A stretch of 64,000 bases of DNA from positions 1 through 64,000 of the IMG/VR virus record IMGVR_UViG_3300017963_000192; one strand, given 5' to 3'. Numbering within the stretch: position 1 is the first letter of the stretch; the number at the start of each line of letters is the position of its first letter. A model generated the notes under the pieces. The model was not told the origin of the DNA. It was given only the letters and a program-made list of their open reading frames with translations, and made no database searches. This document shows positions 5,936-24,263 of this stretch, one piece after another. Both the position numbers and the translations under genes were made by a program.

Positions 5936-6063
5936 TATCTTCCTCCATTTCTCTTTTTTGATTTAAAACACACTCAAAACAAAGATTAATTTTGTCTTTT
6001 CCGTAGGATCTTACTTTTTCTACACTTCCGCAACAATCACAAGTTTCTTTTTCTTTTTTCATA

Positions 6064-6645: not shown

Positions 6646-6655
6646 TTTGTTCTCC

Positions 6656-7953: not shown

Positions 7954-7954
7954 A

Positions 7955-8962
7955 TTAATTCTCCTCGTAGTATTTTATCCATTTTTTTATAGTTGCGTCT
8001 GAAACATTATACATCTTTGAAATAGCTTTTATACTATATCCAAAATTGATAAGTTCTTTAAGTTCGTTTCTGGATGCTGGTGGTATATTAAACATTTTTA
8101 GTTTGTTTTTGTATTTGATGTAATCTTTTATGGGTTCTATTTTTTCGTGATAATTGTCTGGTTTTTTTGTTATTTGATACTCATATTTTAATGCGTGATT
8201 TCCTGTTTTTGGAGGTGTTACATAATATGCACAAATCTCATTATGATTAATCATTTTCATAAAATCATTTTGTATTTTCATTATAATTTCATAAACTGCA
8301 TAATAACTGACATCAACTTCATCAGCAATTTCTTGACATGTTTTTGCACCAAACATGTATTCATCACAAACCTTTTTAGTTGTTTCTGTTTTGGCTCTTT
8401 TTTTATAATAATTTAGAATTCTCATCATATGTTTCATAATTTCTTTTGTTATGAAATACTCATGTACTGAATTCTTTCCACCATATTTCCTATCCCTTGC
8501 TTGAGAATTAGCTACCATACTAATAGGAGTTTTTTTTAAGTGAATAATTTCTGTCTTTATTTGAGAATATAAATTTTTCTTTACTTTTATATTGATAAAA
8601 TAAGGAAATGATGCCATTTTTGAGTCATATTCTATTAAACCTTTTTCAAATAAAATGTATGATTGTTGAAATAAATCTTTAATATCTATTCTATTAGAAT
8701 AGCGTCTACAATATTTTTCATATGTAATAGATGTTGCTCTTTTTAATAAGGGAAGAAATATTACTAATAGAATATTTTTGACATCACTATTTCCTTTTTT
8801 AACAAGCTCTACTAAATAATTAATGTTTTTACAAAGTACTACCATTTCTTTATCAGATTTATTCCTCTTTCTTGCTAAAGATAATGTTTCTATTACTAAT
8901 CTGTTATACTTCGTTAATTTATATATAGTTCTTTCTATTTCTTTTTTGCTATATTTTATCAT
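7955..8962 (-). CDS. sigma70-family RNA polymerase sigma factor with an extra C-terminal HTH
   Basis: Region 2-like DLFQQSYILFEKGLIEYD..SFPYFI; region 4-like KTCQEIADEVDVSYYAV; second HTH GYSIKAISKMYNVSDATIKKWI. Confidence 0.7.
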   Translation of the reverse strand: MIKYSKKEIERTIYKLTKYNRLVIETLSLARKRNKSDKEMVVLCKNINYLVELVKKGNSDVKNILLVIFLPLLKRATSITYEKYCRRYSNRIDIKDLFQQSYILFEKGLIEYDSKMASFPYFINIKVKKNLYSQIKTEIIHLKKTPISMVANSQARDRKYGGKNSVHEYFITKEIMKHMMRILNYYKKRAKTETTKKVCDEYMFGAKTCQEIADEVDVSYYAVYEIIMKIQNDFMKMINHNEICAYYVTPPKTGNHALKYEYQITKKPDNYHEKIEPIKDYIKYKNKLKMFNIPPASRNELKELINFGYSIKAISKMYNVSDATIKKWIKYYEEN

Positions 8963-10899: not shown

Positions 10900-11223
10900 T
10901 TATATTATGTCGTCTTCAGTCTCATAGATTTTAAAGTATCTATCCAATGTAGCAAGTTTTAAAATATTTAAAACATCATTTTGAATATTTACTAATGCGA
11001 ATTCCCCACCATGAGCTTTCATTTTTTTATTACCAGCAACTAACGCTCCTATTCCAGAAGAATCCATATAAGTTACTTTGCTTAAATCAACAAGCACATA
11101 TTTATGAGTTCCATCAGTAACAGTAAACATACTTTTCTTCAACTCACTTACATTGTATAAGTCAACTTCTCCTATAGGCTCTATGACTTTCCAGTCCATA
11201 TAATCCCTAAATGTTATTCTCAT
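10900..11223 (-). CDS. anti-sigma factor antagonist (STAS, RsbV/SpoIIAA-like)
   Basis: GEVDLYN, VDLSKVTYMDSSGIGALV with the phospho-acceptor Ser. Confidence 0.92.
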   Translation of the reverse strand: MRITFRDYMDWKVIEPIGEVDLYNVSELKKSMFTVTDGTHKYVLVDLSKVTYMDSSGIGALVAGNKKMKAHGGEFALVNIQNDVLNILKLATLDRYFKIYETEDDII

Positions 11224-11557
11224 AACATCCCCCTAATATATTTAACGCTTTCATATCATATTATTTAGCCAACTCTTTTTTTCTCCATTAATTCAACATC
11301 CCAAGCATTATTAGATATTGATTTTTCATCAACAATACAATCATGGTAAGTACAATTAAAACAATCCTCACAACAAACTTTTAAGTGTTGCCAAAGACAA
11401 TGTTTATCGTTACATACTAGGGTAGAATAACTATTTTTTTTAGTGAGCTTTCTACCACAAAATTTACAATTCATTTTTCCTTCTTCGAGACATTTTCTAA
11501 ACGTTTAACTCTCTTGTTTTAATTGTTCAAAGAGTCTTTTATCGCAGTTAATATCAT

Positions 11558-11965
11558 TTAGCACTCCTTTTTACCGTAATTAACCTTATAAAATAATGCC
11601 ATTTTTATAGCAGTATTTAAGGATTCTACAGAAAAAGGTTTAGATAAAAATCCACAAGGTTTTAGATTTTTAAATCTATCTACGGTTAATTTTTCTGGGA
11701 ATGCTGTTACAAAAATTATTGAAGTATCAATAATTTTTTGTATTTCTATTGCTGTTTCTACACCATCACGATTTCCTATAATTGAAATGTCCATAAGAAC
11801 AATGTTTGGTTCGTGTTTGATTGCTAAATCAATTGCATCTTCACAATTACTAGCAATTCCCACAACATTATAATTAAAACTGTCTAAAATAGCTTGTATA
11901 TTTAAAGCTATAATATTTTCATCTTCTACTACTAATATTTTTTTATGATTGTTTTCTCCATCCAT
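11558..11965 (-). CDS. stand-alone response-regulator receiver (CheY-like)
   Basis: ILVVEDE, LMDI (phospho-Asp), FVTA, SKPF. Confidence 0.92.
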   Translation of the reverse strand: MDGENNHKKILVVEDENIIALNIQAILDSFNYNVVGIASNCEDAIDLAIKHEPNIVLMDISIIGNRDGVETAIEIQKIIDTSIIFVTAFPEKLTVDRFKNLKPCGFLSKPFSVESLNTAIKMALFYKVNYGKKEC

Positions 11966-12651: not shown

Positions 12652-13758
12652 CTATGATAGTTTATCCTTTATCTTTTTTGTCAAATCATTCATTCTTTTT
12701 TTAACTGTTTCTTGAGTTTTCTTTGCTTTTGGATATAAACCATCAACATAATCCTTTGCCAATTTCTTAACTTTTTTACTACCCTCTAATACTTTTGGTA
12801 ATTTAGGAAGATAAGATTTGTCCTCTTCTTTCATTAAATCTTTATAATTATTTACATTAGTTTTTTTCAAACGAGTATGCCTTCCTCTAACTTCTGAAAC
12901 TAATTTCTGAAGAAGTTCTTCATCCATCTCTTCAAGAGTATCCAATTCATACTCCGCATCGTCTTTTTTAATAGTATCAACAAACTTATCTAAAGTTAAG
13001 TCACAATACTCATCTATCCAATCAACTATAAAATAAAGTTTGTCTGGCATATATTCTTGAACACCAAAACAAATAGGATCTTTTTCTTTAATCTTTTCCT
13101 TATTTGTTTTTAGTTTCTTCTCTTTTTTCTTTGTGCCGTCAACATCTGTCTTTTCTTTATAGTTGAGATACAATACCCAGATTTCATCAAAAAGTTTAAG
13201 CTTTTTAAATCTATCTATTCTTTTTTTGACGTTTGTAGGTATAGGTCTATCATAATGCTCAATCTTACTAAAGCCTATTTCAACATCTTTAACCTTATCT
13301 CTATACTTGTTAACAACAGATTTATCAACGAAATATTCAACACCACAAACCCCAAGTTCTTGCTCTCTTACAATTATAGCAATCTTTCTAGACAATTCCT
13401 CGTACAATGCTGTTTGACCTAAATCTTTGGCTTGTACAACTAACTTTTGAAGTTTAAGCAGTCTTTCATTAAGAAGTCTCTGCTCTAATTTTGAGAGTTT
13501 AGATTTTACGAATTTAAAGTAAAGTCTTGGGTGTATGACTTTCTTATTGTTCACCTTTTCTTCTGCCATATCGAAATGAATCTGTGTTCCGACATCCGTT
13601 ATATAATTACTATATGTTGAAGATGTCCAGGCAATGATTGCAGCAGAAGAATTCTGAATATAAAAAGTATCTCCTGTACCAGCAGAAAGACCAGTAATAC
13701 TAGAAGTCCCAGTATCATAATAAGTACCTTGAGTACTATCAGTTGTTGCCCAAGCCAT
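12652..13758 (-). CDS. conserved large-phage hypothetical protein
   Basis: KDPICFG..LYFIVDWIDEYCDLTLD motif; S/T/G-rich N-terminus. Confidence 0.7.
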   Translation of the reverse strand: MAWATTDSTQGTYYDTGTSSITGLSAGTGDTFYIQNSSAAIIAWTSSTYSNYITDVGTQIHFDMAEEKVNNKKVIHPRLYFKFVKSKLSKLEQRLLNERLLKLQKLVVQAKDLGQTALYEELSRKIAIIVREQELGVCGVEYFVDKSVVNKYRDKVKDVEIGFSKIEHYDRPIPTNVKKRIDRFKKLKLFDEIWVLYLNYKEKTDVDGTKKKEKKLKTNKEKIKEKDPICFGVQEYMPDKLYFIVDWIDEYCDLTLDKFVDTIKKDDAEYELDTLEEMDEELLQKLVSEVRGRHTRLKKTNVNNYKDLMKEEDKSYLPKLPKVLEGSKKVKKLAKDYVDGLYPKAKKTQETVKKRMNDLTKKIKDKLS

Positions 13759-14625: not shown

Positions 14626-14659
14626 TAACTTTTTTTATTAATAATAAAAAACTCTCTTT

Positions 14660-15253
14660 TTAAGAGAGTTTTTTTATGTTATACTTATTTGTTATGATAT
14701 AGTCTGATTTTGTTTTGCTTTCTATGAAGTCACTTATAACACCTGTAGCAAATCCTGTTACAAATGTTATAAATGGTACAGCCTCACGCATTTCACATAT
14801 ATCATCTTGTTCCTCTGGTATATCGTTAGGAACAGAATAATTTTCGTGCCAAATTATTTCTGCTGTATATTGAGGAGAAAATCCTATATGAAGAATATCA
14901 GGATTCCACCCATTTGCAGATTCAAAAAGTTTTCTTGATTCACTATTATCAAAACAATCAATCATAAGATGTTCTTCTTTAATATTTTTAAGATTTGCTA
15001 CGTGCTTTTTATGGGTCATTTTCATATCTAATGGAGAATATTTAAATTTCCTAAGATTAAGACCTAGTACACCTTGCATAGCAAGAACTTTTTTAATTCC
15101 AATATGAGGAATTAGGTATGCTTGTGTCATGATATTTCTTTCTTCAACTACATCATAATCTATACCCATAAATTCAATATTTGGGTATTTCTTTGCTAAT
15201 TGAAGTAATAGATTTGATCCTATAGCACCTAATCCAAATATATCTATCTTCAT
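14660..15253 (-). CDS. ThiF/MoeB/E1-like adenylyltransferase
   Basis: GLGAIGS, IDYDVVEERN..Q, IDCFDN..SR; single Cys in DDICE. Confidence 0.85.
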   Translation of the reverse strand: MKIDIFGLGAIGSNLLLQLAKKYPNIEFMGIDYDVVEERNIMTQAYLIPHIGIKKVLAMQGVLGLNLRKFKYSPLDMKMTHKKHVANLKNIKEEHLMIDCFDNSESRKLFESANGWNPDILHIGFSPQYTAEIIWHENYSVPNDIPEEQDDICEMREAVPFITFVTGFATGVISDFIESKTKSDYIITNKYNIKKLS

Positions 15254-15660
15254 TTCATCTCTCCATATGATAAATATTTTAAAAATAAGAGTTCGTTATG
15301 TAATAAACGTCTTTTAGCATCTTCCTCAATTTCAACATAGCCTTCTTTTTGTTGTGTAAACCATATCATTTTATAATATGTATTAAACATATCAATCTCA
15401 CTTGCTAAAAATGTTATCACATAAAAATTAATATCCATACCAAAAGCTAATCTTAAACCTTTCATACAGTTCTTGTCTGTTTCACTTAAAAATAATGAAT
15501 CAGTTGGATGTACATGATAAAAATGATACAAATCAGAGCAAAGAGAAGTGTTTTTACTGTATTTCCAAATACGCTCAAAATTAAATTCTACAGATGTAGG
15601 AGTTCCTCTACTGAAATCTATTATCTTGTCATTAAATATTGTTATAGATGATTCTATCAT
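15250..15660 (-). CDS. JAB/MPN metallo-isopeptidase-like protein
   Basis: FYHVHP-x5-LSETD (HxH..S..D). Confidence 0.7.
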   Translation of the reverse strand: MIESSITIFNDKIIDFSRGTPTSVEFNFERIWKYSKNTSLCSDLYHFYHVHPTDSLFLSETDKNCMKGLRLAFGMDINFYVITFLASEIDMFNTYYKMIWFTQQKEGYVEIEEDAKRRLLHNELLFLKYLSYGEMK

Positions 15661-15663
15661 TTT

Positions 15664-16257
15664 TTACCTCGATACTTTATGAATCCTTTTCGGTATATCA
15701 TATAAAGCATCTATTAATTCCTCGTTTGCTATTCTTACTTCATCGGTAAGATTTTCAGCAACTTTGTTATAGTAGTCACTATTTATCCAAGTAATATAAT
15801 CATCATTCCCTCTTTTCTTGTTGCACTTTTTACAAGCAGCAACAAGATTTTCTTCTATTGATAGTCCACCCTCTTCCCATAATATTAAGTGGTCAACAGT
15901 TAAAGGAACATCATCATTTCCACAATATCTACATCTATACCTATCCCTTTTAAAAACTTTCCAGGAGACTCCTTGGTCTATTTGACGAGCGGATTTTCTT
16001 ACAATAATCTTTTTTAGCCCGTTTTCATCTTCTGCTAATACTTCAGTCTCCATAATATCGGTTTGACGTATGAATTTTTTCCATTCCTCTAAATTCATAT
16101 TAAGAATCTTAAATTCATTTCCAGAAGTTTTTTCAAATTCACTTGGGAAGAAACAAAAATAATCACATCCATTTCCTGACCATATTGCCCCAGAAATTTG
16201 AATAGTATTACCTACATCTAAAATATTGATATCATCTAATGTAATTGCTTCATTCAT
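15664..16257 (-). CDS. HNH nuclease with N-terminal extension
   Basis: VFKRDRYRCRYCG..LTVDHL..GG..ENLVAACKKCN. Confidence 0.9.
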   Translation of the reverse strand: MNEAITLDDINILDVGNTIQISGAIWSGNGCDYFCFFPSEFEKTSGNEFKILNMNLEEWKKFIRQTDIMETEVLAEDENGLKKIIVRKSARQIDQGVSWKVFKRDRYRCRYCGNDDVPLTVDHLILWEEGGLSIEENLVAACKKCNKKRGNDDYITWINSDYYNKVAENLTDEVRIANEELIDALYDIPKRIHKVSR

Positions 16258-16844: not shown

Positions 16845-17515
16845 CCTGCCCGAAGGGATTCGAACCTACATCTACCAACTTAGCATCCAGCATTATGTTT
16901 CCATAACCACCTTAAAGGCTTGCTGGCTGGACCATATCTTCATCATCACAGATGGAGGGCGTATGGCCTCTACGCATCCCAATTATCGATGGTTTGCTCG
17001 GAATTGTCGTGAAATCTTTTAAAGATTCTTACGATGTTCTCCGAGACAGCCCTCTCCAGTTCTATGGTTCTTTCATTCCTTAATGCATAGCTAAAAGATG
17101 TTCCGCACGATTTAGAACAAGCCCTAAATTTTTTACCAAATCTTGTAGAAAGTTTATTAAAGGGTAATTCAAATAACTTTTTACAATTAGGACATTTTAG
17201 TAATACCATCTTTTTACCTTGTTCTTTACTGCGGAGTTTGTTATGTTCTTTACTATTCATAACTTCAAGATTTTCTATTCTATTATCAAACCTATCTCCA
17301 TTTTTGTGATGCACTATTTCATTAGAATTGAGAAGTCTTTTTAAATGATTTTCAATTATTATTCTATGTAACAAAACATATCCATACTTGCTTGCATATG
17401 GATGATTCTTTACAACAGCATAAAGATAATCACCTTTATTGATAATCTTCTCAATTTTCCACATAGAACGCTCCTTATTTGAAGGATGGTGCTCATCCAC
17501 TTGAGCTACTAGGAC
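16845..17515 (-). tRNA. trnR: tRNA-Arg(UCU) split by a group I intron (exon 1 17515-17482, exon 2 16883-16845); 3' end does not match the 5' end
   Basis: Exon 1 GTCCTAG TA GCTC AAGTGGAT GAGC A CCATC CTT; exon 2 CTAA GTTGG TAGAT GTAGG TTCGAAT CCCTT CGGGCAG G; joined loop CT-TCT-AA; A20. Confidence 0.8.
16884..17481 (-). ncRNA. group I self-splicing intron (598 nt) with HNH ORF in L2
   Basis: P1 CUU/GAG; P2 GTTCTATG/CATAGAAC; P3 GAGGGC/GCCCTC; P4 CTCGGA/TCCGAG; P7 GGCCATA/TATGGTC with J8/7 AAGA; terminal G at 16884. Confidence 0.9.
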
Positions 17516-17776
17516 ATTATTTTCTTCAAATCTTTTTAATTGCTCTAATTTGTTTGCTAAATCTCTTTCCTCCTTAATTTTACGTAATCTATCTATTTTC
17601 GATTTTTTTATTTTATTTAAATAATCTGATTTTAATTTATGATGTTCTGGTAATTTTTGTAACCACAAACTAACAGAACTTTTAGATACATTTAACTCTT
17701 TTGCTATTTTATTAATAGTAAATCCTTGTTTTCTTAAATTAATAGCTTTATTTTTTTCTATTATCTTCTTTTTCAT
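16970..17776 (-). CDS. HTH + HNH homing endonuclease fusion; intron-internal HNH start at 17464 (MWKIEK, 164 aa)
   Basis: N-terminal HTH GFTINKIAKELNVSKSSVSLW; LLHR..VHHKNGDRFDNRIENL; C-terminal CPNC..CSKSC. Confidence 0.85.
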   Translation of the reverse strand: MKKKIIEKNKAINLRKQGFTINKIAKELNVSKSSVSLWLQKLPEHHKLKSDYLNKIKKSKIDRLRKIKEERDLANKLEQLKRFEENNVLVAQVDEHHPSNKERSMWKIEKIINKGDYLYAVVKNHPYASKYGYVLLHRIIIENHLKRLLNSNEIVHHKNGDRFDNRIENLEVMNSKEHNKLRSKEQGKKMVLLKCPNCKKLFELPFNKLSTRFGKKFRACSKSCGTSFSYALRNERTIELERAVSENIVRIFKRFHDNSEQTIDNWDA

Positions 17777-17794
17777 TTATTCCTCCAATAAATG

Positions 17795-17868
17795 TGACTC
17801 CACTGAGAATCGAACTCAGTACCTCGACCTTAAAAGGGTCTTGCTGCTACCAATTGAGCTATGGAGTC
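17795..17868 (-). tRNA. trnK: tRNA-Lys(UUU) copy 1
   Basis: Acceptor GACTCCA/TGGAGTC, loop CTTTTAA, T-arm CTGAG TTCGATT CTCAG. Confidence 0.85.
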
Positions 17869-17874
17869 ATTATG

Positions 17875-17949
17875 TGCCAAGGGGCAGAATCGAACTGCCG
17901 ACACACGGATTTTCAGTCCGCTGCTCTACCGAAATTGAGCTACCTTGAC
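17875..17949 (-). tRNA. trnF: tRNA-Phe(GAA)
   Basis: GCGGA CTGAAAA TCCGT; full cloverleaf. Confidence 0.92.
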
Positions 17950-17955
17950 ATAATG

Positions 17956-18453
17956 TTATCTTTCAAATTCTCCTATTATTTCATATTTATCCTTATCTAT
18001 TTTTATATTTTTCCTATAAAAGCGATAAAACATTCCATGTAGAAAATAAGGTCTAAGTTTGTGTTCTGTTATATGCCTGTCTATGGGACGCTTATTATTT
18101 TCATCATAATCTGTATGCGTTCCTACGTACTTTCTAAAGTATTCGTGTTGTCTATCAAGTTGTTTTAAAAGTTTTTCTGGTATTCTATACACTTTATAAA
18201 ACCACTGGTATTCGTAATCAAAGAGTTCACCCTCTTCAAACTCCCATCCTTCTCTTTCGCAAACTTGTCTCCACTCTTCTTTCTCTTCCTTATTAAACGG
18301 TATTTCATGTACAATTTCTTTATCAAATGCAAAATAAACTCTCTCTCCTTCCCACAACATAATTCCTGTTAATGGACCATCCCAGTAAGCTAGATGGTAC
18401 AGAAATCTCGTTTGTCCATTAGTTTCTTTTGTTAGTTCATCAAGAGTTTTCAT
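17956..18453 (-). CDS. hypothetical phage protein
   Basis: 165 aa; YWDGPLTG motif. Confidence 0.65.
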   Translation of the reverse strand: MKTLDELTKETNGQTRFLYHLAYWDGPLTGIMLWEGERVYFAFDKEIVHEIPFNKEEKEEWRQVCEREGWEFEEGELFDYEYQWFYKVYRIPEKLLKQLDRQHEYFRKYVGTHTDYDENNKRPIDRHITEHKLRPYFLHGMFYRFYRKNIKIDKDKYEIIGEFER

Positions 18454-18456
18454 TTT

Positions 18457-18756
18457 TTATCCTGCATATTTCATTTTATCTCTGTATTCCTCTAAAATAG
18501 AAATTAACTTTTCTACCCCTTTTTTCTTTAGTACAAAAGCATCCGAATACGGGGAACCATAGGTCAGTATTCTCCATATTTGCCTTAACCTATTTCTTAA
18601 ACTTGGTTTACCAGTTATATTCCCATATTGATAAACTGAAAAATACAATAGAGATGGTTTCCCTTCTATTTCGAAATCCTCATCAAGAACTATTTGAATA
18701 AGTTCTGTATGACAATCACATTCAATATATTTTGGTTCAAACATTTGACAACTCAT
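18457..18756 (-). CDS. hypothetical phage protein
   Basis: 99 aa; SD AAGGAGG. Confidence 0.65.
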   Translation of the reverse strand: MSCQMFEPKYIECDCHTELIQIVLDEDFEIEGKPSLLYFSVYQYGNITGKPSLRNRLRQIWRILTYGSPYSDAFVLKKKGVEKLISILEEYRDKMKYAG

Positions 18757-18774
18757 ATCTATAACCTCCTTATG

Positions 18775-18848
18775 TGCGTCCTCTGAGAATCGAACTCAGT
18801 ACCTCGACCTTAAAAGGGTCTTGCTGCTACCAATTGAGCTATGGACGC
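18775..18848 (-). tRNA. trnK: tRNA-Lys(UUU) copy 2 (different acceptor stem)
   Basis: Body identical to copy 1; acceptor GCGTCCA/AGGACGC. Confidence 0.8.
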
Positions 18849-19083
18849 TTTAATAATCTAATAGAAAAACTTAATTCAAACTTGATAAGTTTTAATTTCA
18901 AGACCCATCCTAAAGTTTTAGATTCTATCCAAGTTTCAATACCGATATTAAATATAAAATCTTTATAGATTCCAGCAAATAATAAAATGTGTTCTCCATC
19001 AATTAAAGGATTTCTTGTTTTGTATGTAAAGAATCTCTTACTTTTACATTTGTACCATATGTCATTCATATTAATCTCCTATT

Positions 19084-19156
19084 TCCGCTCGACCGGAATC
19101 GAACCGATTGCCTCTCAGTTATCAGCCGAGTGCTCTACCTATTGAGCTACGAGCGG
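19084..19156 (-). tRNA. trnI: tRNA-Ile(GAU)
   Basis: CTCGG CTGATAA CTGAG. Confidence 0.9.
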
Positions 19157-19335
19157 TTAAGCAACATATTTTATATTTTTTCTCAAATCATAAAATATTG
19201 CAAACTGTAACCATCTAAAACAACCTATTTTCCACCCGTATGTTTTGAGTTTAGGAATTACTTCAAATCTGTATAACAGTATCCCTGGTACAGTATTCTT
19301 TGCTAATCCAATATTAATTATCATAGTTCCTCCTT

Positions 19336-19411
19336 TGGCGAGAGTGGGAGTCGAACCCACAGATTACAGAGTTTTTGGGACTCCAGCCTTTTCCAATTTA
19401 GCCATCTCGCC
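19336..19411 (-). tRNA. trnL: atypical tRNA-Leu(CAA): C33, 7-nt variable region
   Basis: GGAGT CCCAAAA ACTCT; Leu-type D-arm; A73. Confidence 0.6.
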
Positions 19412-19769
19412 TTAATTTGTTTCTTTTTGCTTGGTATGATCTATGACCTTCTCTACAAAGATCACATCTACATCCATGAGCATATTTGCTATGTGTTCCA
19501 TGATTTTCTTTTTTAAGTAAATTATGATGATAGTCACTATGACATTTTCTACACCATACAACACATTTTTTTAATTCTTTTTCTCTTCTCTCTTCAGACC
19601 AAGACCATATTTTATGATCTTCCTTTTCCTTTGGATTTTTATGATGTAATTCCAACTTTTCTATCGAACCACATTTTTCACATACTTTGTCTTTAAAAAA
19701 TTCTAATCTTCTTTTCCTTACCCATAATTTAGCATATTCTCTTTGTTTGTTAACATCCTTATAAGACAT
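19398..19769 (-). CDS. free-standing HNH endonuclease
   Basis: CEKCGS..LELHHK..CVVWCRKCH; C-terminal HGT..Y..GCRCDLC. Confidence 0.85.
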   Translation of the reverse strand: MSYKDVNKQREYAKLWVRKRRLEFFKDKVCEKCGSIEKLELHHKNPKEKEDHKIWSWSEERREKELKKCVVWCRKCHSDYHHNLLKKENHGTHSKYAHGCRCDLCREGHRSYQAKRNKLRRDG

Positions 19770-19790
19770 ACTAATACTCCTTCAATTAAT

Positions 19791-19872
19791 TAGGAGCGAA
19801 GGGAGTTGAACCCTTACACCTTTCGGCATTGGAGCTTAAATCCAATGTGTCTACCAGTTCCACCACGCTCCC
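19791..19872 (-). tRNA. trnL: tRNA-Leu(UAA)
   Basis: TTGGA TTTAAGC TCCAA, long variable arm. Confidence 0.92.
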
Positions 19873-19877
19873 ATATG

Positions 19878-19956
19878 TGCCCCACCTCCGATTCGAACGG
19901 AGACGCTTACGCACAGGGCCTAAACCTGTTGACTAGACCAATTCGTCTAATGGGGC
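19878..19956 (-). tRNA. trnL: tRNA-Leu(UAG)
   Basis: ACAGG TTTAGGC CCTGT, variable arm GCGTAAGCGT. Confidence 0.88.
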
Positions 19957-20063
19957 TTACTTAATTTTAAAAGACCTCTACATTCAGGACATTGCCAAGA
20001 ATGTACAATATCAGTCATTATTTCAAAGACCTTTAAACATTTAAAACATACAAATCTTTTCAT
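19947..20063 (-). CDS. 38-aa Zn-ribbon peptide (not in the ORF track)
   Basis: MKRFVCFKC..WQCPECRG, SD GGAGAGG. Confidence 0.5.
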   Translation of the reverse strand: MKRFVCFKCLKVFEIMTDIVHSWQCPECRGLLKLSKPH

Positions 20064-20078
20064 ATACCTCTCCTTATT

Positions 20079-20154
20079 TCCCCATGACAGGATTCGAACC
20101 TGTAAAGATTTAGTCCCTCAAACTAACGCCTCTACCAGATCGGGCTACATGGGG
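20079..20154 (-). tRNA. trnL: tRNA-Leu(GAG) with 6-nt variable region
   Basis: TTAGT TTGAGGG ACTAA; acceptor CCCCATG/CATGGGG. Confidence 0.75.
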
Positions 20155-20160
20155 TTTTAT

Positions 20161-20553
20161 TTAATTTCTTATAACAACTTGCCTGCCAAACCATGTTTTA
20201 AGAGGGTCAAATCCTCCTTTTATTAAAGTTTCTACATAACCCTGACTTCTTCGTACTTCATCATATTCTTTTCTTTCTTGTTCTTCTCTGTCATTTAATT
20301 CTTGTTGTTCATCTTCCAATTCAACTTCTTTATATATCATATCGAGGTCCATTTCAACAATTTCATTTATTTCATAAAGTTCGGCGTGTTCAAGCTGATT
20401 ATCTCCAGTATAATATTCTTTAATAACTTTGATAAGTTCTACTTTAGCAGATTCTAGTGTTTTTGAATCCAAGTCAATAACATTAAGTCCACATCCTATT
20501 GTGTAATCACATCCTTCCGCTTCTTGAACTATGTGTGCCTTATAAACTTTCAT
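20161..20553 (-). CDS. hypothetical phage protein
   Basis: 130 aa, acidic. Confidence 0.6.
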   Translation of the reverse strand: MKVYKAHIVQEAEGCDYTIGCGLNVIDLDSKTLESAKVELIKVIKEYYTGDNQLEHAELYEINEIVEMDLDMIYKEVELEDEQQELNDREEQERKEYDEVRRSQGYVETLIKGGFDPLKTWFGRQVVIRN

Positions 20554-21251
20554 TTTATTTATCCCCCTTTCTATTCTCTCTTAACTCTATGCAAATAGAG
20601 CTATTACACTCTTCTCCAAAATTAACTTTGCAATCGCATACGCTACATCTCCAACCCTTAATATATTCATTTATTTCGAAAAATTCTAAATCTACACCTG
20701 TAGCTTTCATCTCTTACTTCCTTCAAATATATTTAATGACCTTCTAATGCCAATCTAATTAAATCCCCTTTAACTGTTTTCATTATACCTTCCTTATGGT
20801 TGAATCACTTCATCTTCTTTCAACTCTTTAATATCTTTATCGAATTCTCCATTAGCAAACTTTTGAAGCACTTCAAGATTATCAAGAACCGCTTTAACTT
20901 TATTCTTGCTGAGATTAAATCCACCTCTATAGAAATTCCCTTTAATCTTTACCATTGGAACTCCAGAGCCAAGTTTAGGAAGACCTTCCTTATCTTTTGG
21001 GACAAATTTGTAGAAGTGTTCGATGGTACTTGGTATTACTTCTTCGCCAGTTTCATCTTTTTCTAATTTAACTTTCTTCATTTCAATCTCCTTTTTTAAT
21101 TTTTTCTTTAAATTTTTCCAGTCTTTCTTTACTCTTTTTTTTAGCTTCTTCGCTTCTTTCTTTAAGAAGACCTTTCTTTGTAACATTAGATAGTATATAA
21201 TCTTGGATATCTATTTTATCTTTCTTCATCTTAATCTCCTTAATTTTAATG

Positions 21252-21324
21252 CGGGGCTGACGAGTTTTGATCTCGCTACCTCTTGCGTGACAGGCAAGCA
21301 CTCTCCCAATTGAGCTACAGCCAC
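21252..21324 (-). tRNA. trnD: tRNA-Asp(GUC), degenerate T-loop
   Basis: CTTGC CTGTCAC GCAAG; G73; T-loop ATCAAAA; 2:71 mismatch. Confidence 0.75.
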
Positions 21325-21360
21325 CATAAAAGTTATACCACAGCCCCATTATAAATTAGA

Positions 21361-21717
21361 TTATCTTTCATCTTTTTCCAAACCCAAGCATTGCTTTAAG
21401 TAAGCTGCTAAATCTGCATCTTCTTCATTAGCCTCTTCTTTGTATTCTTCTAGTAGTTCTATAATTCTTTCTTTTAATGATTGGAATTTGAATTCTTTCT
21501 TTTTGCCTGGTTCTAAATGAACATTATACCAGTTATCCCTCATTTTTGTAGCTTGGTCAAACGCATCTAAAGCATTTAATAGATACTCTGCTAAAATGTG
21601 GTCTGGTGTGTTACTGCCATTCTCTGCACTTGAAATATTAATTGCTTCCTTAATTTTCTCTCTTAAATCCATACATACCTCCCTTACTCCTTGTTCTTTT
21701 TTATAAATTTTATACAT
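21361..21717 (-). CDS. hypothetical phage protein
   Basis: NGSNTPDHILAEYL..RDNWY motif. Confidence 0.6.
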   Translation of the reverse strand: MYKIYKKEQGVREVCMDLREKIKEAINISSAENGSNTPDHILAEYLLNALDAFDQATKMRDNWYNVHLEPGKKKEFKFQSLKERIIELLEEYKEEANEEDADLAAYLKQCLGLEKDER

Positions 21718-22203
21718 TCTTGAAAACCTGCAACAAAGTATGATTGTTCAGTTGCAGTCATATTTAATTTATCACTTATCTTTATTGCAATGATTCCAGC
21801 TTCTTCTATATTTGGTAATAAATTATCTAACGTATCCATTTATCTTTACTCCTTTTGTGTATTGATATCCTTCATTTCATTTCTCTTTATAAGTTATTTT
21901 ATTTAAATATATCTTTTAATATTTAAATTTATACCTCTCATATTTATTAAAATCACAATAATATGCATCACCATCTTCCCATACCCACGTTTTTAGATGA
22001 TTACATTGCCCTTCCCCTTTTCTTACGATGCAACTCGTAGGACCAAGTATATTTAAGCAGAAATCTACTCCCATTATCACATCATATAAAGGGCAATAGG
22101 TAGGATGGGCTGATTTAGCATTTTCACTTGTTATCATAACAATTCTATTTATTTTACCAGTACCTTTACAATTAAGCATCTCCCTTACTCCTTGTTCTTT
22201 TTT
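21679..22203. repeat. 24-bp direct repeat containing two SD motifs (21679-21702, 22180-22203)
   Basis: Minus strand AAAAAAGAACAAGGAGTAAGGGAG, followed closely by ATG in both copies. Confidence 0.75.
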
Positions 22204-22476
22204 TATCTGGTCTTGTAACCAAAAATAGAGCTTATCTATGGTGAACTTTTCATTATAGAACGGAAGTGTTACTTCCCAATCAATCTTCTTTTCTGAAAGA
22301 TATTCAATCATATATCCAACAAGCATCCTTTCATCCAGTTCAATCTCCCCATAACTCCCCATTCCAGCTACAATAGATATCCCTTCTTCTGACAGTTCTA
22401 TTTGTTTGTATCCTTTAGTTTCTTCTCCATATATGGTGTTGTTGTTTTCTCTCATCCAATTCCAAAATTCTTTCAT
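21916..22476 (-). CDS. hypothetical protein, probably a fusion of two small genes
   Basis: Internal SD repeat and ATG at 22179 (MLNCKG..). Confidence 0.55.
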   Translation of the reverse strand: MKEFWNWMRENNNTIYGEETKGYKQIELSEEGISIVAGMGSYGEIELDERMLVGYMIEYLSEKKIDWEVTLPFYNEKFTIDKLYFWLQDQIKKEQGVREMLNCKGTGKINRIVMITSENAKSAHPTYCPLYDVIMGVDFCLNILGPTSCIVRKGEGQCNHLKTWVWEDGDAYYCDFNKYERYKFKY

Positions 22477-22505
22477 ACTCCCCCTCTACCGACAAACATA
22501 ATTAT

Positions 22506-22595
22506 TTGAACTAACATAGCCTAAAGGCTATGGATTCCTGATCTGAGCTTATTACATCTACACTCATATCTCTCAAACTGTTTCACAGTTTCGCT
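22506..22595 (-). mobile_element. orphan IS200/IS605 (tnpB)-type right end / omegaRNA-like remnant
   Basis: GGAATC CATAGCC TTTA GGCTATG T TAGTTCAA; upstream hairpin AAACTG TGAAA CAGTTT; no transposase or tnpB nearby. Confidence 0.6.
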
Positions 22596-22618
22596 TATTC
22601 TCCATAAGTTAAGTGAAA

Positions 22619-23293
22619 TTACTCGCTTAATTCTTCTATGCTATAAATTTCCATATCTTCATATTTATCAGGCTTCAACCCAGAAGATGTTAAAGCGTTC
22701 CATAAAGCTTCTGCTTCAATTTCTAATTCTTTTCTTGATGTACTTTCACTCTCAAAAATAAATCTGTATTCTTCTTGAGGTTCATCAACACGCATCAGTT
22801 CTTCAACTTCATCGTCTATTTTATAGCCCTTTCTCTCCAGCATTTCTGCTAAATCAGAAAGTTTACTAAAAAATTGTTTCATCGTTCCCGCAGTTTTCGT
22901 TACTTGTTCAGAGGTTAGCCCTAGTTCTTTTGCAATTTCTATTATTCTATTTCTATAAGGCTTGTATATTTCGTAGGCTTTTTTATATCTCTTTATCTTA
23001 TCTCTTAATTCTGTGTTTTCTTTAGAGAAATTGTCTATTATCTCGTTCTTTTCTTTTAATAACTCTTTGTATTTCTCTAATCTTTTCTTGCTTTTTAATT
23101 TACTCTCTTTATAACTTTCTTCTTTTATTTCTTCTATTTGTTTATAATGATTATCACAAATCTCTTTTATTTTATTTTCATAATATTCTCTTAACTCATC
23201 TTCTTTTTCTTTATAAATCTTCTCAACTTTTGTTTTTTGAGCACTTAAAATCTTATCAAGTTTTTCTTTAGTCATCCGATAAGTTTTCGACAT
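22619..23293 (-). CDS. coiled-coil hypothetical protein
   Basis: 224 aa, K/E-rich heptads; SD AAGGAG. Confidence 0.7.
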   Translation of the reverse strand: MSKTYRMTKEKLDKILSAQKTKVEKIYKEKEDELREYYENKIKEICDNHYKQIEEIKEESYKESKLKSKKRLEKYKELLKEKNEIIDNFSKENTELRDKIKRYKKAYEIYKPYRNRIIEIAKELGLTSEQVTKTAGTMKQFFSKLSDLAEMLERKGYKIDDEVEELMRVDEPQEEYRFIFESESTSRKELEIEAEALWNALTSSGLKPDKYEDMEIYSIEELSE

Positions 23294-23368
23294 ATTCTTA
23301 TCTCCTTAATATAACATTAATAATTATATAAAAATATGTCTCATTTAAAGTCAATAAAAAAATACAAT

Positions 23369-23439
23369 TTGCGGGTGACAGAATTGAACTGTCCTGGGCG
23401 GCTTATGAGACCGTTGAGTAACCACTACTCTAACCCGCA
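23369..23439 (-). tRNA. trnM: tRNA-Met(CAU), initiator-like
   Basis: ACGGT CTCATAA GCCGC; fMet-like GCGGG acceptor, A11:U24, TTCAA T-loop; lacks the 3 G-C anticodon pairs. Confidence 0.75.
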
Positions 23440-23442
23440 ATG

Positions 23443-23716
23443 TGTCAGTTTCTAATAGTGAGGATTCATCGGGTAGCTAATCCCTCCACCACACGTTCGG
23501 CTTCACTGACAAGCTCGGTTGCACAGAGGAGTCCTGTTTAGGACACTGGTGTCCGTCCTCTCTTTACCTATAAAGGGTTAATTTAAAAGTTTTTGATATC
23601 GCTGTGCCAACGATAAAAGAGTTATATAGTACCCTATTTCTCTTGAATATTCAATGACTCTAGTTGTCTCAGTTCCTTTCGGTCACTGTTTAGAATATTC
23701 TGCTATATAACCCAAG
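23443..23716 (-). ncRNA. unidentified multi-domain structured RNA
   Basis: Several long stems, a kink-turn motif and no ORF; see findings. Confidence 0.6.
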
Positions 23717-23719
23717 ATG

Positions 23720-23771
23720 AAGAGGCGGAAAGGATCGAAAACCCATTGTACTGCCATTGTACTACGCCTCT
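23720..23771 (-). pseudogene. internally deleted tRNA (Gln-like)
   Basis: Acceptor AGAGGCG/CGCCTCT and D-arm GTAC AATGGCA GTAC intact; anticodon-to-T-arm segment reduced to 19 nt. Confidence 0.65.
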
Positions 23772-23953
23772 ATATTATTTAATTTCTCAATAATTTCCTT
23801 TTTGTTTTCTACAATTACTTGTGATAATTTTAATATCCCATAAAAACCTAATCTGTCTAAATCATTATGGTAATTTCTATAAAGCTTGTCAAGAAATTTA
23901 GCGAATTCTTTGTCTTTATCGCTAAAGAAATACTCCCAATTTTGTTTACTCAT
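23762..23953 (-). CDS. hypothetical phage protein
   Basis: 63 aa, SD GGGGG. Confidence 0.55.
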   Translation of the reverse strand: MSKQNWEYFFSDKDKEFAKFLDKLYRNYHNDLDRLGFYGILKLSQVIVENKKEIIEKLNNIEA

Positions 23954-23967
23954 AAAAACCCCCTATT

Positions 23968-24040
23968 TGACGCTAGGGGGAGTTGAACCCGCCATTACAG
24001 AGTTGAAAGCCCTGTGGCCTAACCATTAGCCGATAGCGCC
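23968..24040 (-). tRNA. trnE: tRNA-Glu(UUC)
   Basis: CAGGG CTTTCAA CTCTG. Confidence 0.88.
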
Positions 24041-24045
24041 TTATG

Positions 24046-24117
24046 TGGAGCCGAGGGGAATCGAACCCTCGTCTTTTTGCTTGCAAAGCAAACGCCTTCC
24101 CAGTTGGCTACGACCCC
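24046..24117 (-). tRNA. trnA: tRNA-Ala(UGC)
   Basis: TTTGC TTTGCAA GCAAA; G3:U70. Confidence 0.92.
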
Positions 24118-24178
24118 ATAAATAATGTTATTGTTGAATTTAAGTCAATGAATTTTTTATAATTATTAATAAAAAATG

Positions 24179-24263
24179 TAGGTCAGGAGGGATTCGAACC
24201 CCCATCGGTTTTACCCTACACTTCATTAGCAGTGAAGCCTCTTACCAGTTAGAGTACCTTTCC
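24179..24263 (-). tRNA. trnS: tRNA-Ser(GCU) with non-matching 3' acceptor strand (chimera)
   Basis: CTTCA CTGCTAA TGAAG, long variable arm; 5' GGAAAGG vs 3' CTGACCT. Confidence 0.65.

What the first reader, a model, noticed from the sequence alone, without database searches (positions are those of the whole stretch)
14660..16257. Coupled HNH-JAB-ThiF(E1-like) operon with no visible Ubl or E2
Seen: 3-nt gap and 4-nt overlap link an HNH nuclease, a JAB protease (HxH..S..D) and a minimal ThiF lacking Zn-binding CxxC pairs, just downstream of the tRNA region. Established: E1+JAB pairs operate in bacterial ubiquitin-like conjugation (CBASS Cap2/Cap3, Bil) and sulfur transfer; the ThiF-family TcdA modifies tRNA t6A37. 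Inference: a phage-encoded (de)conjugation module, possibly counter-defence or tRNA modification, acting on an unknown or host substrate.
Basis: partly seen in the sequence, partly recalled or inferred. Interest (0 to 1): 0.72.

Follow-up and report, generated by a model that had tools for sequence, protein, structure and literature searches.

The report
Phage E1–JAB enzyme pair with HNH neighbour
A jumbo phage carries an intact pair of ubiquitin-system-type enzymes (an E1-like activator and a JAB protease) without any ubiquitin-like protein; in most related phages this pair is the end of an apparently undescribed gene cassette that starts with a Ro60-like RNA-binding protein, and the HNH nuclease next to it is only a lineage-specific neighbour.

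Summary
There are three intact minus-strand genes: HNH at 16257-15664, JAB at 15660-15250 and ThiF at 15253-14660. They are separated by a 3-nt gap and a 4-nt overlap, and a terminator-like hairpin sits at the ThiF stop. JAB has the full JAMM motif (E3, H49, H51, S59, D62) and an MPN fold (pLDDT 93.6). ThiF is a minimal, virus-restricted E1 adenylation domain with no CxxC. The 217.7-kb phage contig has no Ubl, E2 or CD-NTase.

Among 43 related phage loci, JAB lies upstream of ThiF in 33. An unknown 270-aa protein ("X270") is present in 33 and a Ro60-like TROVE+vWA protein in 26, in the order Ro60-like, X270, JAB, ThiF. tRNA genes are present in 26. The HNH family appears in only 10 loci, at varying positions, and also occurs alone.

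The window holds a reduced version that lacks Ro60-like and X270. The likely mechanism, which is inferred, is ATP-dependent activation of a carboxylate by ThiF and amide hydrolysis by JAB on a substrate encoded elsewhere, in an RNA/tRNA-linked process. The substrate is unknown. I rate it a new variant of a known kind, interest 0.63.

The parts
15664..16257 (-). HNH nuclease, 197 aa. It has a conserved N-terminal domain of unknown fold (residues 1-95) and a Cas9/IscB-like HNH domain (97-193) with CxxC...DH...N...CxxCN and a basic C-terminal tail.
   Evidence: ORF. Pfam HNH E=2e-11. NCBIfam IscB HNH region E=4e-14. 637+ homologues at 50-65% identity. Invariant residues. AF2 model pLDDT 80. HNH-domain matches at Z 5.7, and none for residues 1-95.
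15250..15660 (-). Minimal JAMM/MPN+ (JAB) metallopeptidase, 136 aa, with catalytic motif E3, H49-x-H51, S59, D62.
   Evidence: ORF. Invariant residues. Family of 250 clusters at 50% identity. AF2 pLDDT 93.6. Foldseek against PDB returns only JAMM proteins: Caldiarchaeum Rpn11 homologue E=2e-5, CSN5, BRCC36, PfJAMM1, BubCD, Cap3. AFDB cluster hits are all JAB/MPN. There are weak RadC and Prok-JAB Pfam hits in 7 of 64 family members.
14660..15253 (-). Minimal E1-like (ThiF-family) adenylyltransferase domain, 197 aa. It has GxGxxG, D32/D34/N40/Q44/K55, the DCxDN...R motif (D99-R107) and an invariant C153. It has no CxxC zinc site and no extra domain.
   Evidence: ORF. Pfam ThiF 30.2 bits. NCBIfam ThiF models E=4e-12, below cut-off. 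Invariant columns. PDB profile hits to UBA6, UBA5, UBA1, MoeB, SAE2, MccB, Uba4, ThiF, TcdA and Cap2. Atlas: virus-dominated clusters, TM 0.88 to short ThiFs and 0.83 to a ThiF-ThiS fusion.
14646..14674 (-). Terminator-like hairpin (13-bp stem, T-rich tail) overlapping the ThiF stop codon. It is the probable 3' end of the transcription unit.
   Evidence: five terminator-like sites were found against 0.8 expected, and this is the longest stem.
17794..24263 (-). Context: a cluster of 13 tRNA genes lying transcriptionally upstream. It holds 13 of the 14 tRNAs of the whole contig.

Best explanation
The locus encodes a phage-specific two-enzyme module. One enzyme is a minimal E1-type adenylyltransferase (ThiF, 14660-15253). 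The other, just 5' of it and translationally coupled, is a minimal JAMM/MPN+ metallohydrolase (JAB, 15250-15660). The pair is the conserved 3' half of a jumbo-phage cassette with the order Ro60-like (TROVE+vWA) protein, X270, JAB, ThiF. That cassette sits in or beside the phage tRNA gene region, often with a tRNA(-like) gene directly in front of the Ro60-like gene. The window's phage carries a reduced form without Ro60-like and X270. The HNH nuclease (15664-16257) is probably co-transcribed. It is a separately conserved phage gene that neighbours the cassette in one sub-lineage, not a core component.

Mechanism (inferred). ThiF uses ATP to adenylate a carboxylate. This is most likely the C-terminal carboxylate of a protein not encoded in the operon, such as a host sulfur-carrier-type Ubl like ThiS/MoaD, or another phage or host protein. 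Activation may go through the invariant Cys153. JAB hydrolyses the resulting amide or isopeptide bond, or trims the precursor. Together they would form an E2-less, Ubl-less conjugation/deconjugation switch. The conserved context suggests this switch acts on RNA/tRNA surveillance or repair during infection.

Shown: gene integrity, folds, catalytic motifs, pair and cassette conservation, tRNA association, and the absence of a Ubl or E2. Inferred: the chemistry on a protein substrate, the identity of that substrate, and the RNA-related role.
For: Folds and motifs.

Pair conservation: JAB was found in 33 of 43 non-redundant ThiF loci, and it was upstream on the same strand in 32 of 32 profile hits. 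Pairwise identities of JAB and ThiF co-vary with r=0.83.

Cassette: X270 is present in 33 of 43 loci and the Ro60-like protein in 26 of 43. Tight four-gene operons occur in L028, L030, L031, L032 and L047. The Ro60-like assignment rests on a profile hit to human Ro60 at E=3.8e-12, to D. radiodurans Rsr, and on a MIDAS motif.

tRNA link: 26 of 43 loci plus the window carry tRNA genes, whereas only 17.7% of the window's own genome lies within 8 kb of a tRNA. A tRNA(-like) gene lies directly 5' of the Ro60-like or X270 gene in at least 10 loci.

Independence from Ro60/X270: the window's contig has neither, yet it keeps every invariant catalytic residue.

Kinship with Ubl-activating E1s rather than TcdA: 40-46 bits against 27 bits, and TM 0.83 to a ThiF-ThiS fusion.

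The ThiF clade is essentially virus-restricted: one hit on a 3-kb contig among 185,579 species' genomes, and Atlas clusters that are 94-100% viral.
Against: No substrate has been identified. There is no Ubl, E2 or CD-NTase in the contig. No conserved small GG-ended protein was seen in the relatives' cassettes.

The cassette association may partly reflect conserved synteny within one large phage group rather than a functional link, and the loci are phylogenetically non-independent.

The contig is only 88% complete, so the absence of Ro60-like and X270 is not absolute.

X270 has no recognisable fold or family.

JAMM enzymes acting outside protein substrates, or E1-like enzymes acting on non-protein carboxylates (TcdA, MccB-type), would fit the same sequence data.
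Confidence: 0.5

Rival explanations
1. Counter-defence against host ubiquitin-like immunity. The phage JAB strips host conjugates (CBASS type II cGAS conjugates, Bil or Bub Ubl marks on virion proteins). The E1-like protein traps or mis-activates the host Ubl or CD-NTase C-terminus.
For: The JAB model matches Cap3 and BubCD among JAMM structures. ThiF hits Cap2 and PADLOC E1-E2 models weakly. Relatives carry anti-defence-type genes nearby: an Acb2/Tad1-hairpin protein in L009, Gad2 in L010, NADAR x2 in L006, and NAPRTase/ARPP-1 in L005. The phage encodes neither a Ubl nor an E2, so a host substrate is plausible.
Against: A deconjugase alone would be enough, yet the E1 is strictly paired with it. 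The pair is usually joined to a Ro60-like RNA-binding protein and X270, and it sits among tRNA genes, which this model does not explain. The best structural matches are generic JAMM proteins (Rpn11 homologue, CSN5), not Cap3. No host is known.
Confidence: 0.18
2. RNA/tRNA nucleoside chemistry. The E1-like enzyme adenylates a carboxylate on a modified nucleoside, either for a TcdA-like cyclodehydration of t6A or for amide formation. JAB acts as an amidohydrolase on the same adduct. Together they would retune or repair phage or host tRNAs.
For: The locus lies 1.5 kb downstream of the tRNA cluster. tRNA genes occur in 26 of 43 related loci. It is linked to a Ro60-like protein, a known non-coding-RNA binder. 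TcdA is among the PDB hits.
Against: The TcdA matches are the weaker ones (27 bits, against 40-46 for UBA5, UBA6 and MoeB). From my own knowledge, no JAMM enzyme is known to act on nucleic-acid adducts. tRNA regions of large phages are general hotspots for accessory genes and homing endonucleases, for example 16970-17776.
Confidence: 0.15
3. The HNH nuclease is itself the client. As with CD-NTase priming by Cap2/Cap3, ThiF would activate the HNH C-terminus for conjugation and JAB would reverse it, switching the nuclease on or off.
For: There is tight translational coupling in the window, L008 and L017. The HNH C-terminus is conserved as IPRxxHxxSR. HNH identities co-vary with ThiF (r=0.71). 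HNH keeps reappearing around the cassette at different positions.
Against: 33 of 43 ThiF loci have no HNH. The HNH family is larger than the ThiF family and occurs alone (L012, L014). Some members carry extra basic tails after the SR terminus, so the terminus is not fixed. The N-terminal domain shows no Ubl-like fold match.
Confidence: 0.07
4. Sulfur-carrier chemistry. The enzyme is a ThiF/MoeB-type activator of a host ThiS/MoaD/CysO-like carrier, used for thiolation (a cofactor, thio-nucleoside or thio-DNA). JAB would release the carrier, as Mec+ does for CysO.
For: The best NCBIfam matches are short ThiS-adenylyltransferase models (PRK08644 at E=4e-12, thiF_fam2). The structure is similar to a ThiF-ThiS fusion. 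Known E1+JAB sulfur-transfer operons are described in PMC1779556.
Against: All scores are far below the model cut-offs (46 against 159 bits). The operon has no rhodanese, cysteine desulfurase, carrier or sulfur-acceptor enzyme, and the contig has no ThiS. This model does not explain the Ro60-like/X270 context.
Confidence: 0.07
5. A decaying remnant. After loss of Ro60-like and X270, the remaining genes no longer have a function in this phage.
For: The window's contig lacks the two upstream cassette genes that most relatives have.
Against: All three ORFs are intact, and every family-invariant catalytic residue is kept. Several independent relatives also lack Ro60-like and X270 within their sampled flanks, yet keep the pair at 50-59% identity: L005 and L006 (5 kb upstream sampled) and L052 (10 kb sampled).
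Confidence: 0.03

Closest known systems
Type II CBASS Cap2 (E1-E2 fusion) and Cap3 (JAB)
   Same: An E1-type adenylation domain is paired with a JAMM hydrolase, and no ubiquitin-like protein is present. In CBASS the activated carboxylate is the C-terminus of a partner enzyme. Cap2 and Cap3 both appear among the sequence and structure matches.
   Different: There is no E2 domain, no CD-NTase and no effector in the contig. The system is phage-encoded, not host-encoded. The E1 is about a third the size of Cap2. The matches to Cap2/Cap3 are weaker than those to generic E1 and JAMM proteins.
Bacterial Bil (BilABCD) and Bub ubiquitination-like operons
   Same: They contain E1 and JAB enzymes of the same superfamilies. 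BubCD and a 'THIF-type' E1 (9egc) are among the hits.
   Different: Those operons encode their own Ubl and E2, and neither is present here. They are host defence systems, whereas this is a virus-restricted clade.
Sulfur-carrier systems: ThiF/MoeB with ThiS/MoaD, and CysO/Mec+ or QbsCDE with a JAB
   Same: They use a short single-domain E1 with the same nucleotide-binding motifs and a conserved Cys at the position of the E1 'PxCT' motif. E1+JAB operons of this kind are described in PMC1779556. The best NCBIfam hits are ThiF models.
   Different: Scores are far below the family cut-offs. There is no CxxC zinc site, no carrier protein and no sulfur-donor or sulfur-acceptor gene. The genomic context (Ro60-like, X270, tRNAs) is different.
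Archaeal SAMP/UbaA/HvJAMM1 and Thermus TtuB/TtuC (E2-less conjugation linked to tRNA thiolation)
   Same: These work with an E1 and a JAMM enzyme but no E2, and they connect protein modification with tRNA chemistry (PMC4443979 and PMC2948915, listed). PfJAMM1 is among the structural matches.
   Different: Those systems depend on dedicated Ubls (SAMPs, TtuB), and none is encoded here.
Ro60/Rsr-Y RNA ribonucleoproteins and phage ROT/TROVE proteins
   Same: The cassette's first gene in relatives is a TROVE+vWA protein, often preceded by a tRNA(-like) gene. This recalls rsr next to the tRNA-like YrlA (that part is from my own knowledge). TROVE proteins in some jumbo phages are noted in PMC7824862. 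An archaeal-virus preprint reports Ro60 and three ThiF homologues in the same genomes (10.1101/2021.07.29.454249).
   Different: Neither paper links Ro60 to an E1/JAB pair. The window's phage has no Ro60-like gene. No Rfam Y RNA family was matched.
TcdA/CsdL tRNA t6A dehydratase
   Same: It is an E1-like fold that adenylates a carboxylate on tRNA, and the window's genes lie near tRNA genes.
   Different: It is a weaker match than the Ubl E1s (27 against 40-46 bits). From my own knowledge, TcdA has no JAB partner.
PRTRC (ParB-related, ThiF-related) cassette
   Same: It is a ThiF-containing cassette on mobile elements, recently noted in Burkholderia prophages (PMC13366799).
   Different: The PRTRC ThiF model scores only 18 bits against a cut-off of 145. 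PRTRC has a ParB and its own accessory proteins (PRTRC system proteins A-F). No Prok_Ub or Prok-E2_B match was found here.

Membership tests
JAMM/MPN+ (JAB) metallopeptidases | Catalytic motif E ... H-x-H-x(7)-S-x-x-D | tested here: met
   E3, H49, H51, S59 and D62 are invariant in 12 close relatives and at least 90% conserved in 64 diverse relatives. The motif aligns to the Rpn11-homologue motif in the PDB profile search.
JAMM/MPN+ (JAB) metallopeptidases | MPN fold | tested here: met
   The AF2 model has pLDDT 93.6. All top Foldseek hits in PDB and AFDB clusters are JAMM/MPN/JAB proteins, with probability 1.00 and TM up to 0.61-0.70.
JAMM/MPN+ (JAB) metallopeptidases | Zinc-dependent (iso)peptidase activity | not testable with these tools
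   This needs biochemistry.
E1-like / ThiF-family adenylyltransferases | Rossmann-type adenylation domain with GxGxxG, conserved Asp/Lys/Arg and the DxxDN Mg2+/ATP motif | tested here: met
   Pfam ThiF scores above its cut-off. The invariant residues are G7/G9/G12, D32, N40, K55, D99, D102, N103 and R107. The profile hits E1 adenylation domains at E down to 4e-11. TM is 0.88 to ThiF-family models.
E1-like / ThiF-family adenylyltransferases | Zn-binding CxxC pairs, as in MoeB and E. coli ThiF | tested here: not met
   The only cysteines are C100 and C153. This is not required for superfamily membership, since short ThiF models of ~200 aa exist.
Complete prokaryotic Ubl-conjugation systems (Bil, Bub, PRTRC-type, E1/E2/JAB/Ubl operons) | An encoded ubiquitin-like protein with a C-terminal Gly | tested here: not met
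   The 217.7-kb contig has no ThiS, ubiquitin or Prok_Ub match. The only 50-140-aa ORF ending in GG is a hydrophobic membrane-like peptide at contig 211667-211918.
Complete prokaryotic Ubl-conjugation systems (Bil, Bub, PRTRC-type, E1/E2/JAB/Ubl operons) | An E2-like (UBC-fold) protein | tested here: not met
   The contig has no Prok-E2_B or UQ_con match. In relatives, X270 carries an invariant Cys motif, but its fold could not be determined.
Type II CBASS (Cap2/Cap3) | A CD-NTase (SMODS) whose C-terminus is the E1 substrate, plus an E1-E2 fusion | tested here: not met
   There is no SMODS match in the contig. The ThiF is a single 197-aa domain.
TcdA/CsdL t6A dehydratase | Specific sequence kinship with TcdA and activity on tRNA t6A37 | tested here: inconclusive
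   TcdA chains are hit at 27 bits, below UBA5/UBA6/MoeB at 40-46 bits. Activity cannot be tested.
HNH (beta-beta-alpha-Me) nucleases | HNH motif with a Cys4 zinc site and catalytic His/Asn | tested here: met
   Pfam HNH E=2e-11. The invariant residues are C109, C112, D122, H123, N137, C145 and the near-invariant C142 and N146. The structure matches Cas9/IscB HNH domains.
Ro60-like/X270/JAB/ThiF phage cassette (defined here) | All four genes in the order Ro60-like, X270, JAB, ThiF | tested here: not met
   Only JAB and ThiF are present. Profile searches of every ORF of at least 40 aa in the contig found no Ro60-like or X270 protein, and no TROVE or vWA domain. A 62%-identical relative, L051, has all four plus HNH.

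The most novel reading that the evidence does not exclude
Large phages carry their own ubiquitin-like-system machinery, tied to an RNA-surveillance particle. In this reading the Ro60-like/X270/JAB/ThiF cassette is a virus-specific conjugation system. The minimal E1, possibly working with X270 as an unrecognised E2-like Cys enzyme, would attach a protein to or around a Ro60-type ribonucleoprotein built on a phage tRNA-like RNA. That protein could be a hijacked host ThiS/MoaD-type carrier or a cassette protein. The purpose would be to protect or repair the phage's translation resources against tRNA-targeting host defences. The window would then show the stripped-down E1/JAB core, able to work without the Ro60 part.
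Probability: 0.2. Interest if true: 0.85.

Novelty: new variant of a known kind. Interest (0 to 1): 0.63.

Why it matters
E1 and JAB enzymes are the entry and exit points of ubiquitin-like signalling. In bacteria they have recently been tied to anti-phage immunity (CBASS type II, Bil). Here a large, essentially virus-only clade of minimal E1/JAB pairs exists with no Ubl or E2. It is habitually linked to a Ro60-like RNA-binding protein and to tRNA genes.

I found no description of that link in the searchable literature. One preprint reports Ro60 and ThiF homologues in the same archaeal viruses but treats them separately.

If the pair conjugates a host or phage protein in an RNA-repair context, it would be a new viral use of ubiquitin-type chemistry. 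It would also give a compact system (197 + 136 aa) for studying E2-less activation. If the enzyme instead acts on tRNA, it would extend the TcdA-type branch of E1 enzymes. Either outcome can be tested with simple biochemistry.

Tried and rejected
1. Ubl hidden in the HNH N-terminal domain. The AF2 model of residues 1-95 (strand-helix-strand-strand-helix-strand-helix-strand-strand) gave no beta-grasp or other convincing match in the ESM Atlas, VIA-wide PDB, AFDB clusters or BFVD. Rejected as unsupported.

2. HNH C-terminus as the E1 substrate. The C-terminus is conserved, but some members extend it with basic tails, and the HNH family is mostly independent of ThiF. Kept only as a low-probability rival.

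3. Ubl, E2 or CD-NTase elsewhere in the phage. Seven family searches and a scan for GG-ended ORFs over the 217.7-kb contig found nothing.

4. Complex prediction on the L008 proteins (ThiF, JAB, HNH, X270; partner X270) returned 'no answer' with score 0.01. This is not evidence either way. I resent the job without those rows and without rows from annotated GenBank records.

5. X270 identity. There was no consistent Pfam, PHROG, PADLOC or PDB-profile hit, and no Atlas model. The resemblance of its invariant 'G-[IFY]-C-[LM]-S-G-x-D' motif to the UBC 'G-x-I-C-L' active site is by eye only and is not claimed.

6. Nucleotide-level relatives in GenBank phages. There were none beyond a 96-nt stretch. 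A single-protein pattern search of IMG/VR found only the window's own contig.

7. Rfam. Only tRNAs were found in the window and in nine relatives' loci, with no Y RNA family.

8. Cellular homologues. One 3-kb MAG contig was the only hit in 185,579 species' genomes.
Full report
**What is in the window.**
The window is the first 64 kb of a 217.7-kb linear viral contig that CheckV rates 88% complete. The same proteins occur on contigs of up to 234.7 kb, so this is a jumbo phage. The finding's coordinates hold three consecutive minus-strand ORFs:
- 16257-15664, 197 aa (HNH)
- 15660-15250, 136 aa (JAB)
- 15253-14660, 197 aa (ThiF)

They are separated by a 3-nt gap and a 4-nt overlap. A 13-bp-stem terminator-like hairpin overlaps the stop codon of the last gene. 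Thirteen tRNA genes lie at 17794-24263 on the same strand. These are 13 of the 14 tRNAs in the whole contig. The description in the finding is therefore accurate.

**The three proteins.**
HNH: the first protein is an HNH nuclease (Pfam E=2e-11). Its C-terminal half (residues 97-193) superimposes on Cas9/IscB/McrA-type HNH domains (NCBIfam IscB region). Its N-terminal 95 residues are strongly conserved in more than 600 homologues, but they match no known fold.

JAB: the second protein has no Pfam hit of its own. It belongs to a family of about 250 clusters at 50% identity. In that family E3, H49, H51, S59 and D62 are invariant or nearly so, which is exactly the JAMM motif. The AF2 model (pLDDT 93.6) matches only JAMM/MPN proteins:
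- from the PDB: Rpn11 homologue, CSN5, BRCC36, PfJAMM1, BubCD and Cap3
- from AFDB clusters: JAB/MPN entries only

ThiF: the third protein passes the Pfam ThiF cut-off narrowly (30.2 bits against 28.1). Its family profile hits E1 adenylation domains at E down to 4e-11, including UBA6, UBA5, UBA1, MoeB, SAE2, MccB, Uba4, ThiF, TcdA and Cap2. It keeps the glycine loop, the Asp/Asn/Gln/Lys set and the DCxDN...R motif, and it has an invariant Cys153. It has no CxxC. The ESM Atlas places it in virus-dominated ThiF clusters; the largest has 524 members, 97% viral. Its model has TM 0.88 to ~200-aa bacterial ThiF proteins and 0.83 to a ThiF-ThiS fusion. A pattern scan of one genome from each of 185,579 prokaryote species found a single 3-kb MAG contig, so this clade is essentially viral.

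**No Ubl or E2.**
Searches of the whole contig with ThiS, ubiquitin, Prok_Ub, Prok-E2_B, UQ_con and SMODS models found nothing. There is only one ThiF. The only small ORF ending in GG is a hydrophobic peptide at contig 211667-211918.

**What the conserved unit really is.**
I collected 43 non-redundant related loci: nine from metagenome contigs that encode ThiF homologues, 32 from an IMG/VR scan with a ThiF profile, and two from GenBank phages. I scored every ORF with profiles of the families. The results were:
- JAB is present in 33 loci. It was upstream on the same strand in all 32 profile hits, plus one more seen by eye in Rctr197k.
- A ~270-aa protein of unknown family ('X270') is present in 33 loci.
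- A 500-600-aa protein ('Y600') is present in 26 loci.
- The gene order is always Y600, X270, JAB, ThiF. The only exception is L020, where JAB precedes X270.
- Compact four-gene operons occur in L028, L030, L031, L032 and L047.
- X270, Y600 and HNH were not sampled in every locus, because several upstream flanks were short (550 nt to 5 kb), so those counts are lower bounds.

Y600 is a Ro60-like protein. Its profile hits human Ro60 (E=3.8e-12), Xenopus Ro60, D. radiodurans Rsr and 'TROVE domain' structures, and it has a vWA MIDAS motif. X270 has an invariant G...C...D...S motif near its C-terminus, but no hit in Pfam, PHROGs, PADLOC or the PDB.

**tRNA association.**
tRNA genes occur in 26 of the 43 loci and next to the window's genes. 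By comparison, only 17.7% of the window's own genome lies within 8 kb of a tRNA. In at least ten loci, one tRNA(-like) gene sits directly in front of the Ro60-like or X270 gene. From my own knowledge, this recalls the rsr-YrlA arrangement in bacteria. No Rfam Y RNA family was matched.

**Where the HNH gene fits.**
The HNH family is present in only 10 of the 43 loci. It lies between X270 and JAB in L008, L009, L017, L018 and L051, between JAB and ThiF in L022, and upstream of the Ro60-like gene in L037 and L039. Two of three loci retrieved through HNH homologues have no JAB or ThiF within 5 kb (L012, L014).

Where both are present, HNH identity tracks ThiF identity (r=0.71; JAB against ThiF gives r=0.83). 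The HNH gene therefore looks like a vertically inherited resident of this genomic arm rather than a recently mobile homing endonuclease. The data do not make it a component of the E1/JAB module, however.

**The window's version.**
Profile searches of all ORFs of at least 40 aa in the contig, and TROVE and vWA searches, found no Ro60-like or X270 gene. The syntenic position upstream of HNH holds small ORFs, an HNH_3/HTH homing endonuclease (16970-17776) and the tRNAs.

A relative whose ThiF is 62% identical (L051) has all five families. Another at 55% (L052) has only JAB-ThiF within 10 kb. L005 and L006 have HNH-JAB-ThiF with inserted genes between them. The E1/JAB pair therefore persists, with all catalytic residues, in lineages where Ro60-like and X270 are absent from the sampled flanks. 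This argues that the pair's substrate is not necessarily either of those proteins, and that the window's copy is not a dead remnant. The caveat is that the contig is 88% complete.

**Mechanism.**
Shown: an intact E1-type adenylation domain and an intact JAMM hydrolase, translationally coupled and co-evolving.

Inferred from the established chemistry of the two superfamilies: ThiF adenylates a carboxylate with ATP, and JAB hydrolyses an amide or isopeptide involving that carboxylate, or trims the precursor.

I favour a protein C-terminus as the substrate, for three reasons:
- The profile scores higher against Ubl-activating E1s than against TcdA (40-46 bits against 27).
- The fold resembles a ThiF-ThiS fusion.
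- From my own knowledge, every characterised JAMM enzyme acts on peptide or isopeptide bonds.

Because the phage encodes no Ubl or E2, the substrate must come from elsewhere. Host ThiS/MoaD-type carriers are the obvious universally available candidates. This is an inference, not a result.

The recurrent Ro60-like and tRNA context points to RNA surveillance or repair as the process served. That is plausibly a response to host tRNA-targeting defences, but shared synteny could produce the same pattern.

The rivals are listed with their evidence: counter-defence against CBASS or Bil conjugation, TcdA-like nucleoside chemistry, HNH as the client, sulfur transfer, and a decaying remnant.

**Comparison with the literature.**
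- The 2006 survey of prokaryotic Ubl systems describes E1/JAB operons with Ubls, and lambda-type tail-assembly JAB/Ubl genes. It does not describe this arrangement.
- The jumbo-phage overview mentions ROT/TROVE proteins in a few phages and does not mention JAB, E1 or ThiF.
- A preprint on Asgard-archaeal viruses reports a Ro60 (TROVE+vWA) protein and three ThiF/E1-like proteins in the same viral genomes. It interprets them separately, as hijacking of host ubiquitin systems and as RNA binding.
- PRTRC ThiF cassettes in Burkholderia prophages are a different system.
- Searches combining ThiF, JAB, TROVE, vWA and phage terms found no paper on the cassette.

The literature search covers open-access papers only.

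**Verdict.**

The most useful new fact is the conserved Ro60-like/X270/JAB/ThiF cassette, of which this locus is a reduced member. I rate it a new variant of a known kind, with interest 0.63.

Noticed in passing
G000:C1:123400-123473 (outside the window); L039:3386-3460; L044:2145-2216; L014:1578-1651, 2779-2853 and 3299-3705: Suppressor-type tRNAs. The window's own contig has a tRNA with anticodon CTA, which reads TAG (ARAGORN labels it 'Pyl'). Relatives carry tRNAs with anticodons TTA (reads TAA) and TCA (reads TGA, labelled 'SeC'). L014 also has a tmRNA. This may hint at stop-codon suppression or recoding in this phage group. All genes studied here read normally in table 11.
   Followed up: no
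window 23720-23771 (-): Rfam reports a weak, short tRNA match (30 bits, just over the gathering score) that ARAGORN does not call. It may be a tRNA fragment or pseudogene inside the tRNA cluster.
   Followed up: no
window 16970-17776 (-) and 19398-19769 (-): Two further HNH-type genes sit in the tRNA region. One is a 268-aa HTH + HNH_3 protein of homing-endonuclease type (Pfam E=3e-10). The other is a 123-aa Cys/His-rich protein; by eye, its homologues sit directly after ThiF in L005 (5599-5961) and L006 (5659-5970).
   Followed up: partly
window 12652-13758 (-): A 368-aa lysine-rich protein matches PHROG 10081, annotated 'transposase' (E=2.8e-20). It lies about 900 nt downstream of the ThiF gene.
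   Followed up: no
window 10900-11223 (-) and 11558-11965 (-): By eye, these are a STAS/anti-sigma-antagonist-like protein (107 aa) and a response-regulator receiver-like protein (135 aa) downstream of the operon. The relative L052 has a Pfam STAS protein at the corresponding place after ThiF (11289-11618). I did not run these through Pfam myself.
   Followed up: no
L023:4874-5539 and 8001-8579; L034:3799-4467 and 8001-8579: Two relatives carry two ThiF paralogues each. A divergent 221-222-aa copy follows JAB, and the family-typical 192-aa copy lies 3-4 kb further on.
   Followed up: no
L051:9507-10004: In the relative closest to the window that has the full cassette, a P-loop kinase (AAA_33/KTI12/Zeta_toxin hits) overlaps the ThiF start codon by 4 nt. 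This suggests a further accessory activity coupled to the E1 in that phage.
   Followed up: no
L009:7592-7804; L010:7675-8391; L006:4080-4995; L005:6051-8644: Genes of anti-defence or NAD/ADP-ribose type lie next to the cassette in relatives: an Acb2/Tad1-hairpin protein, Gad2, two NADAR proteins, and ARPP-1 plus NAPRTase. None was found next to the window's copy.
   Followed up: no
L001 (Virus Rctr197k, KX853510.1) 5956-8582 compared with window 19336-20154: The distant relative Rctr197k has the same run of four tRNA-Leu genes (anticodons gag, tag, taa, caa) near its ThiF as the window does. Its gene order relative to ThiF is inverted (tRNAs downstream).
   Followed up: no
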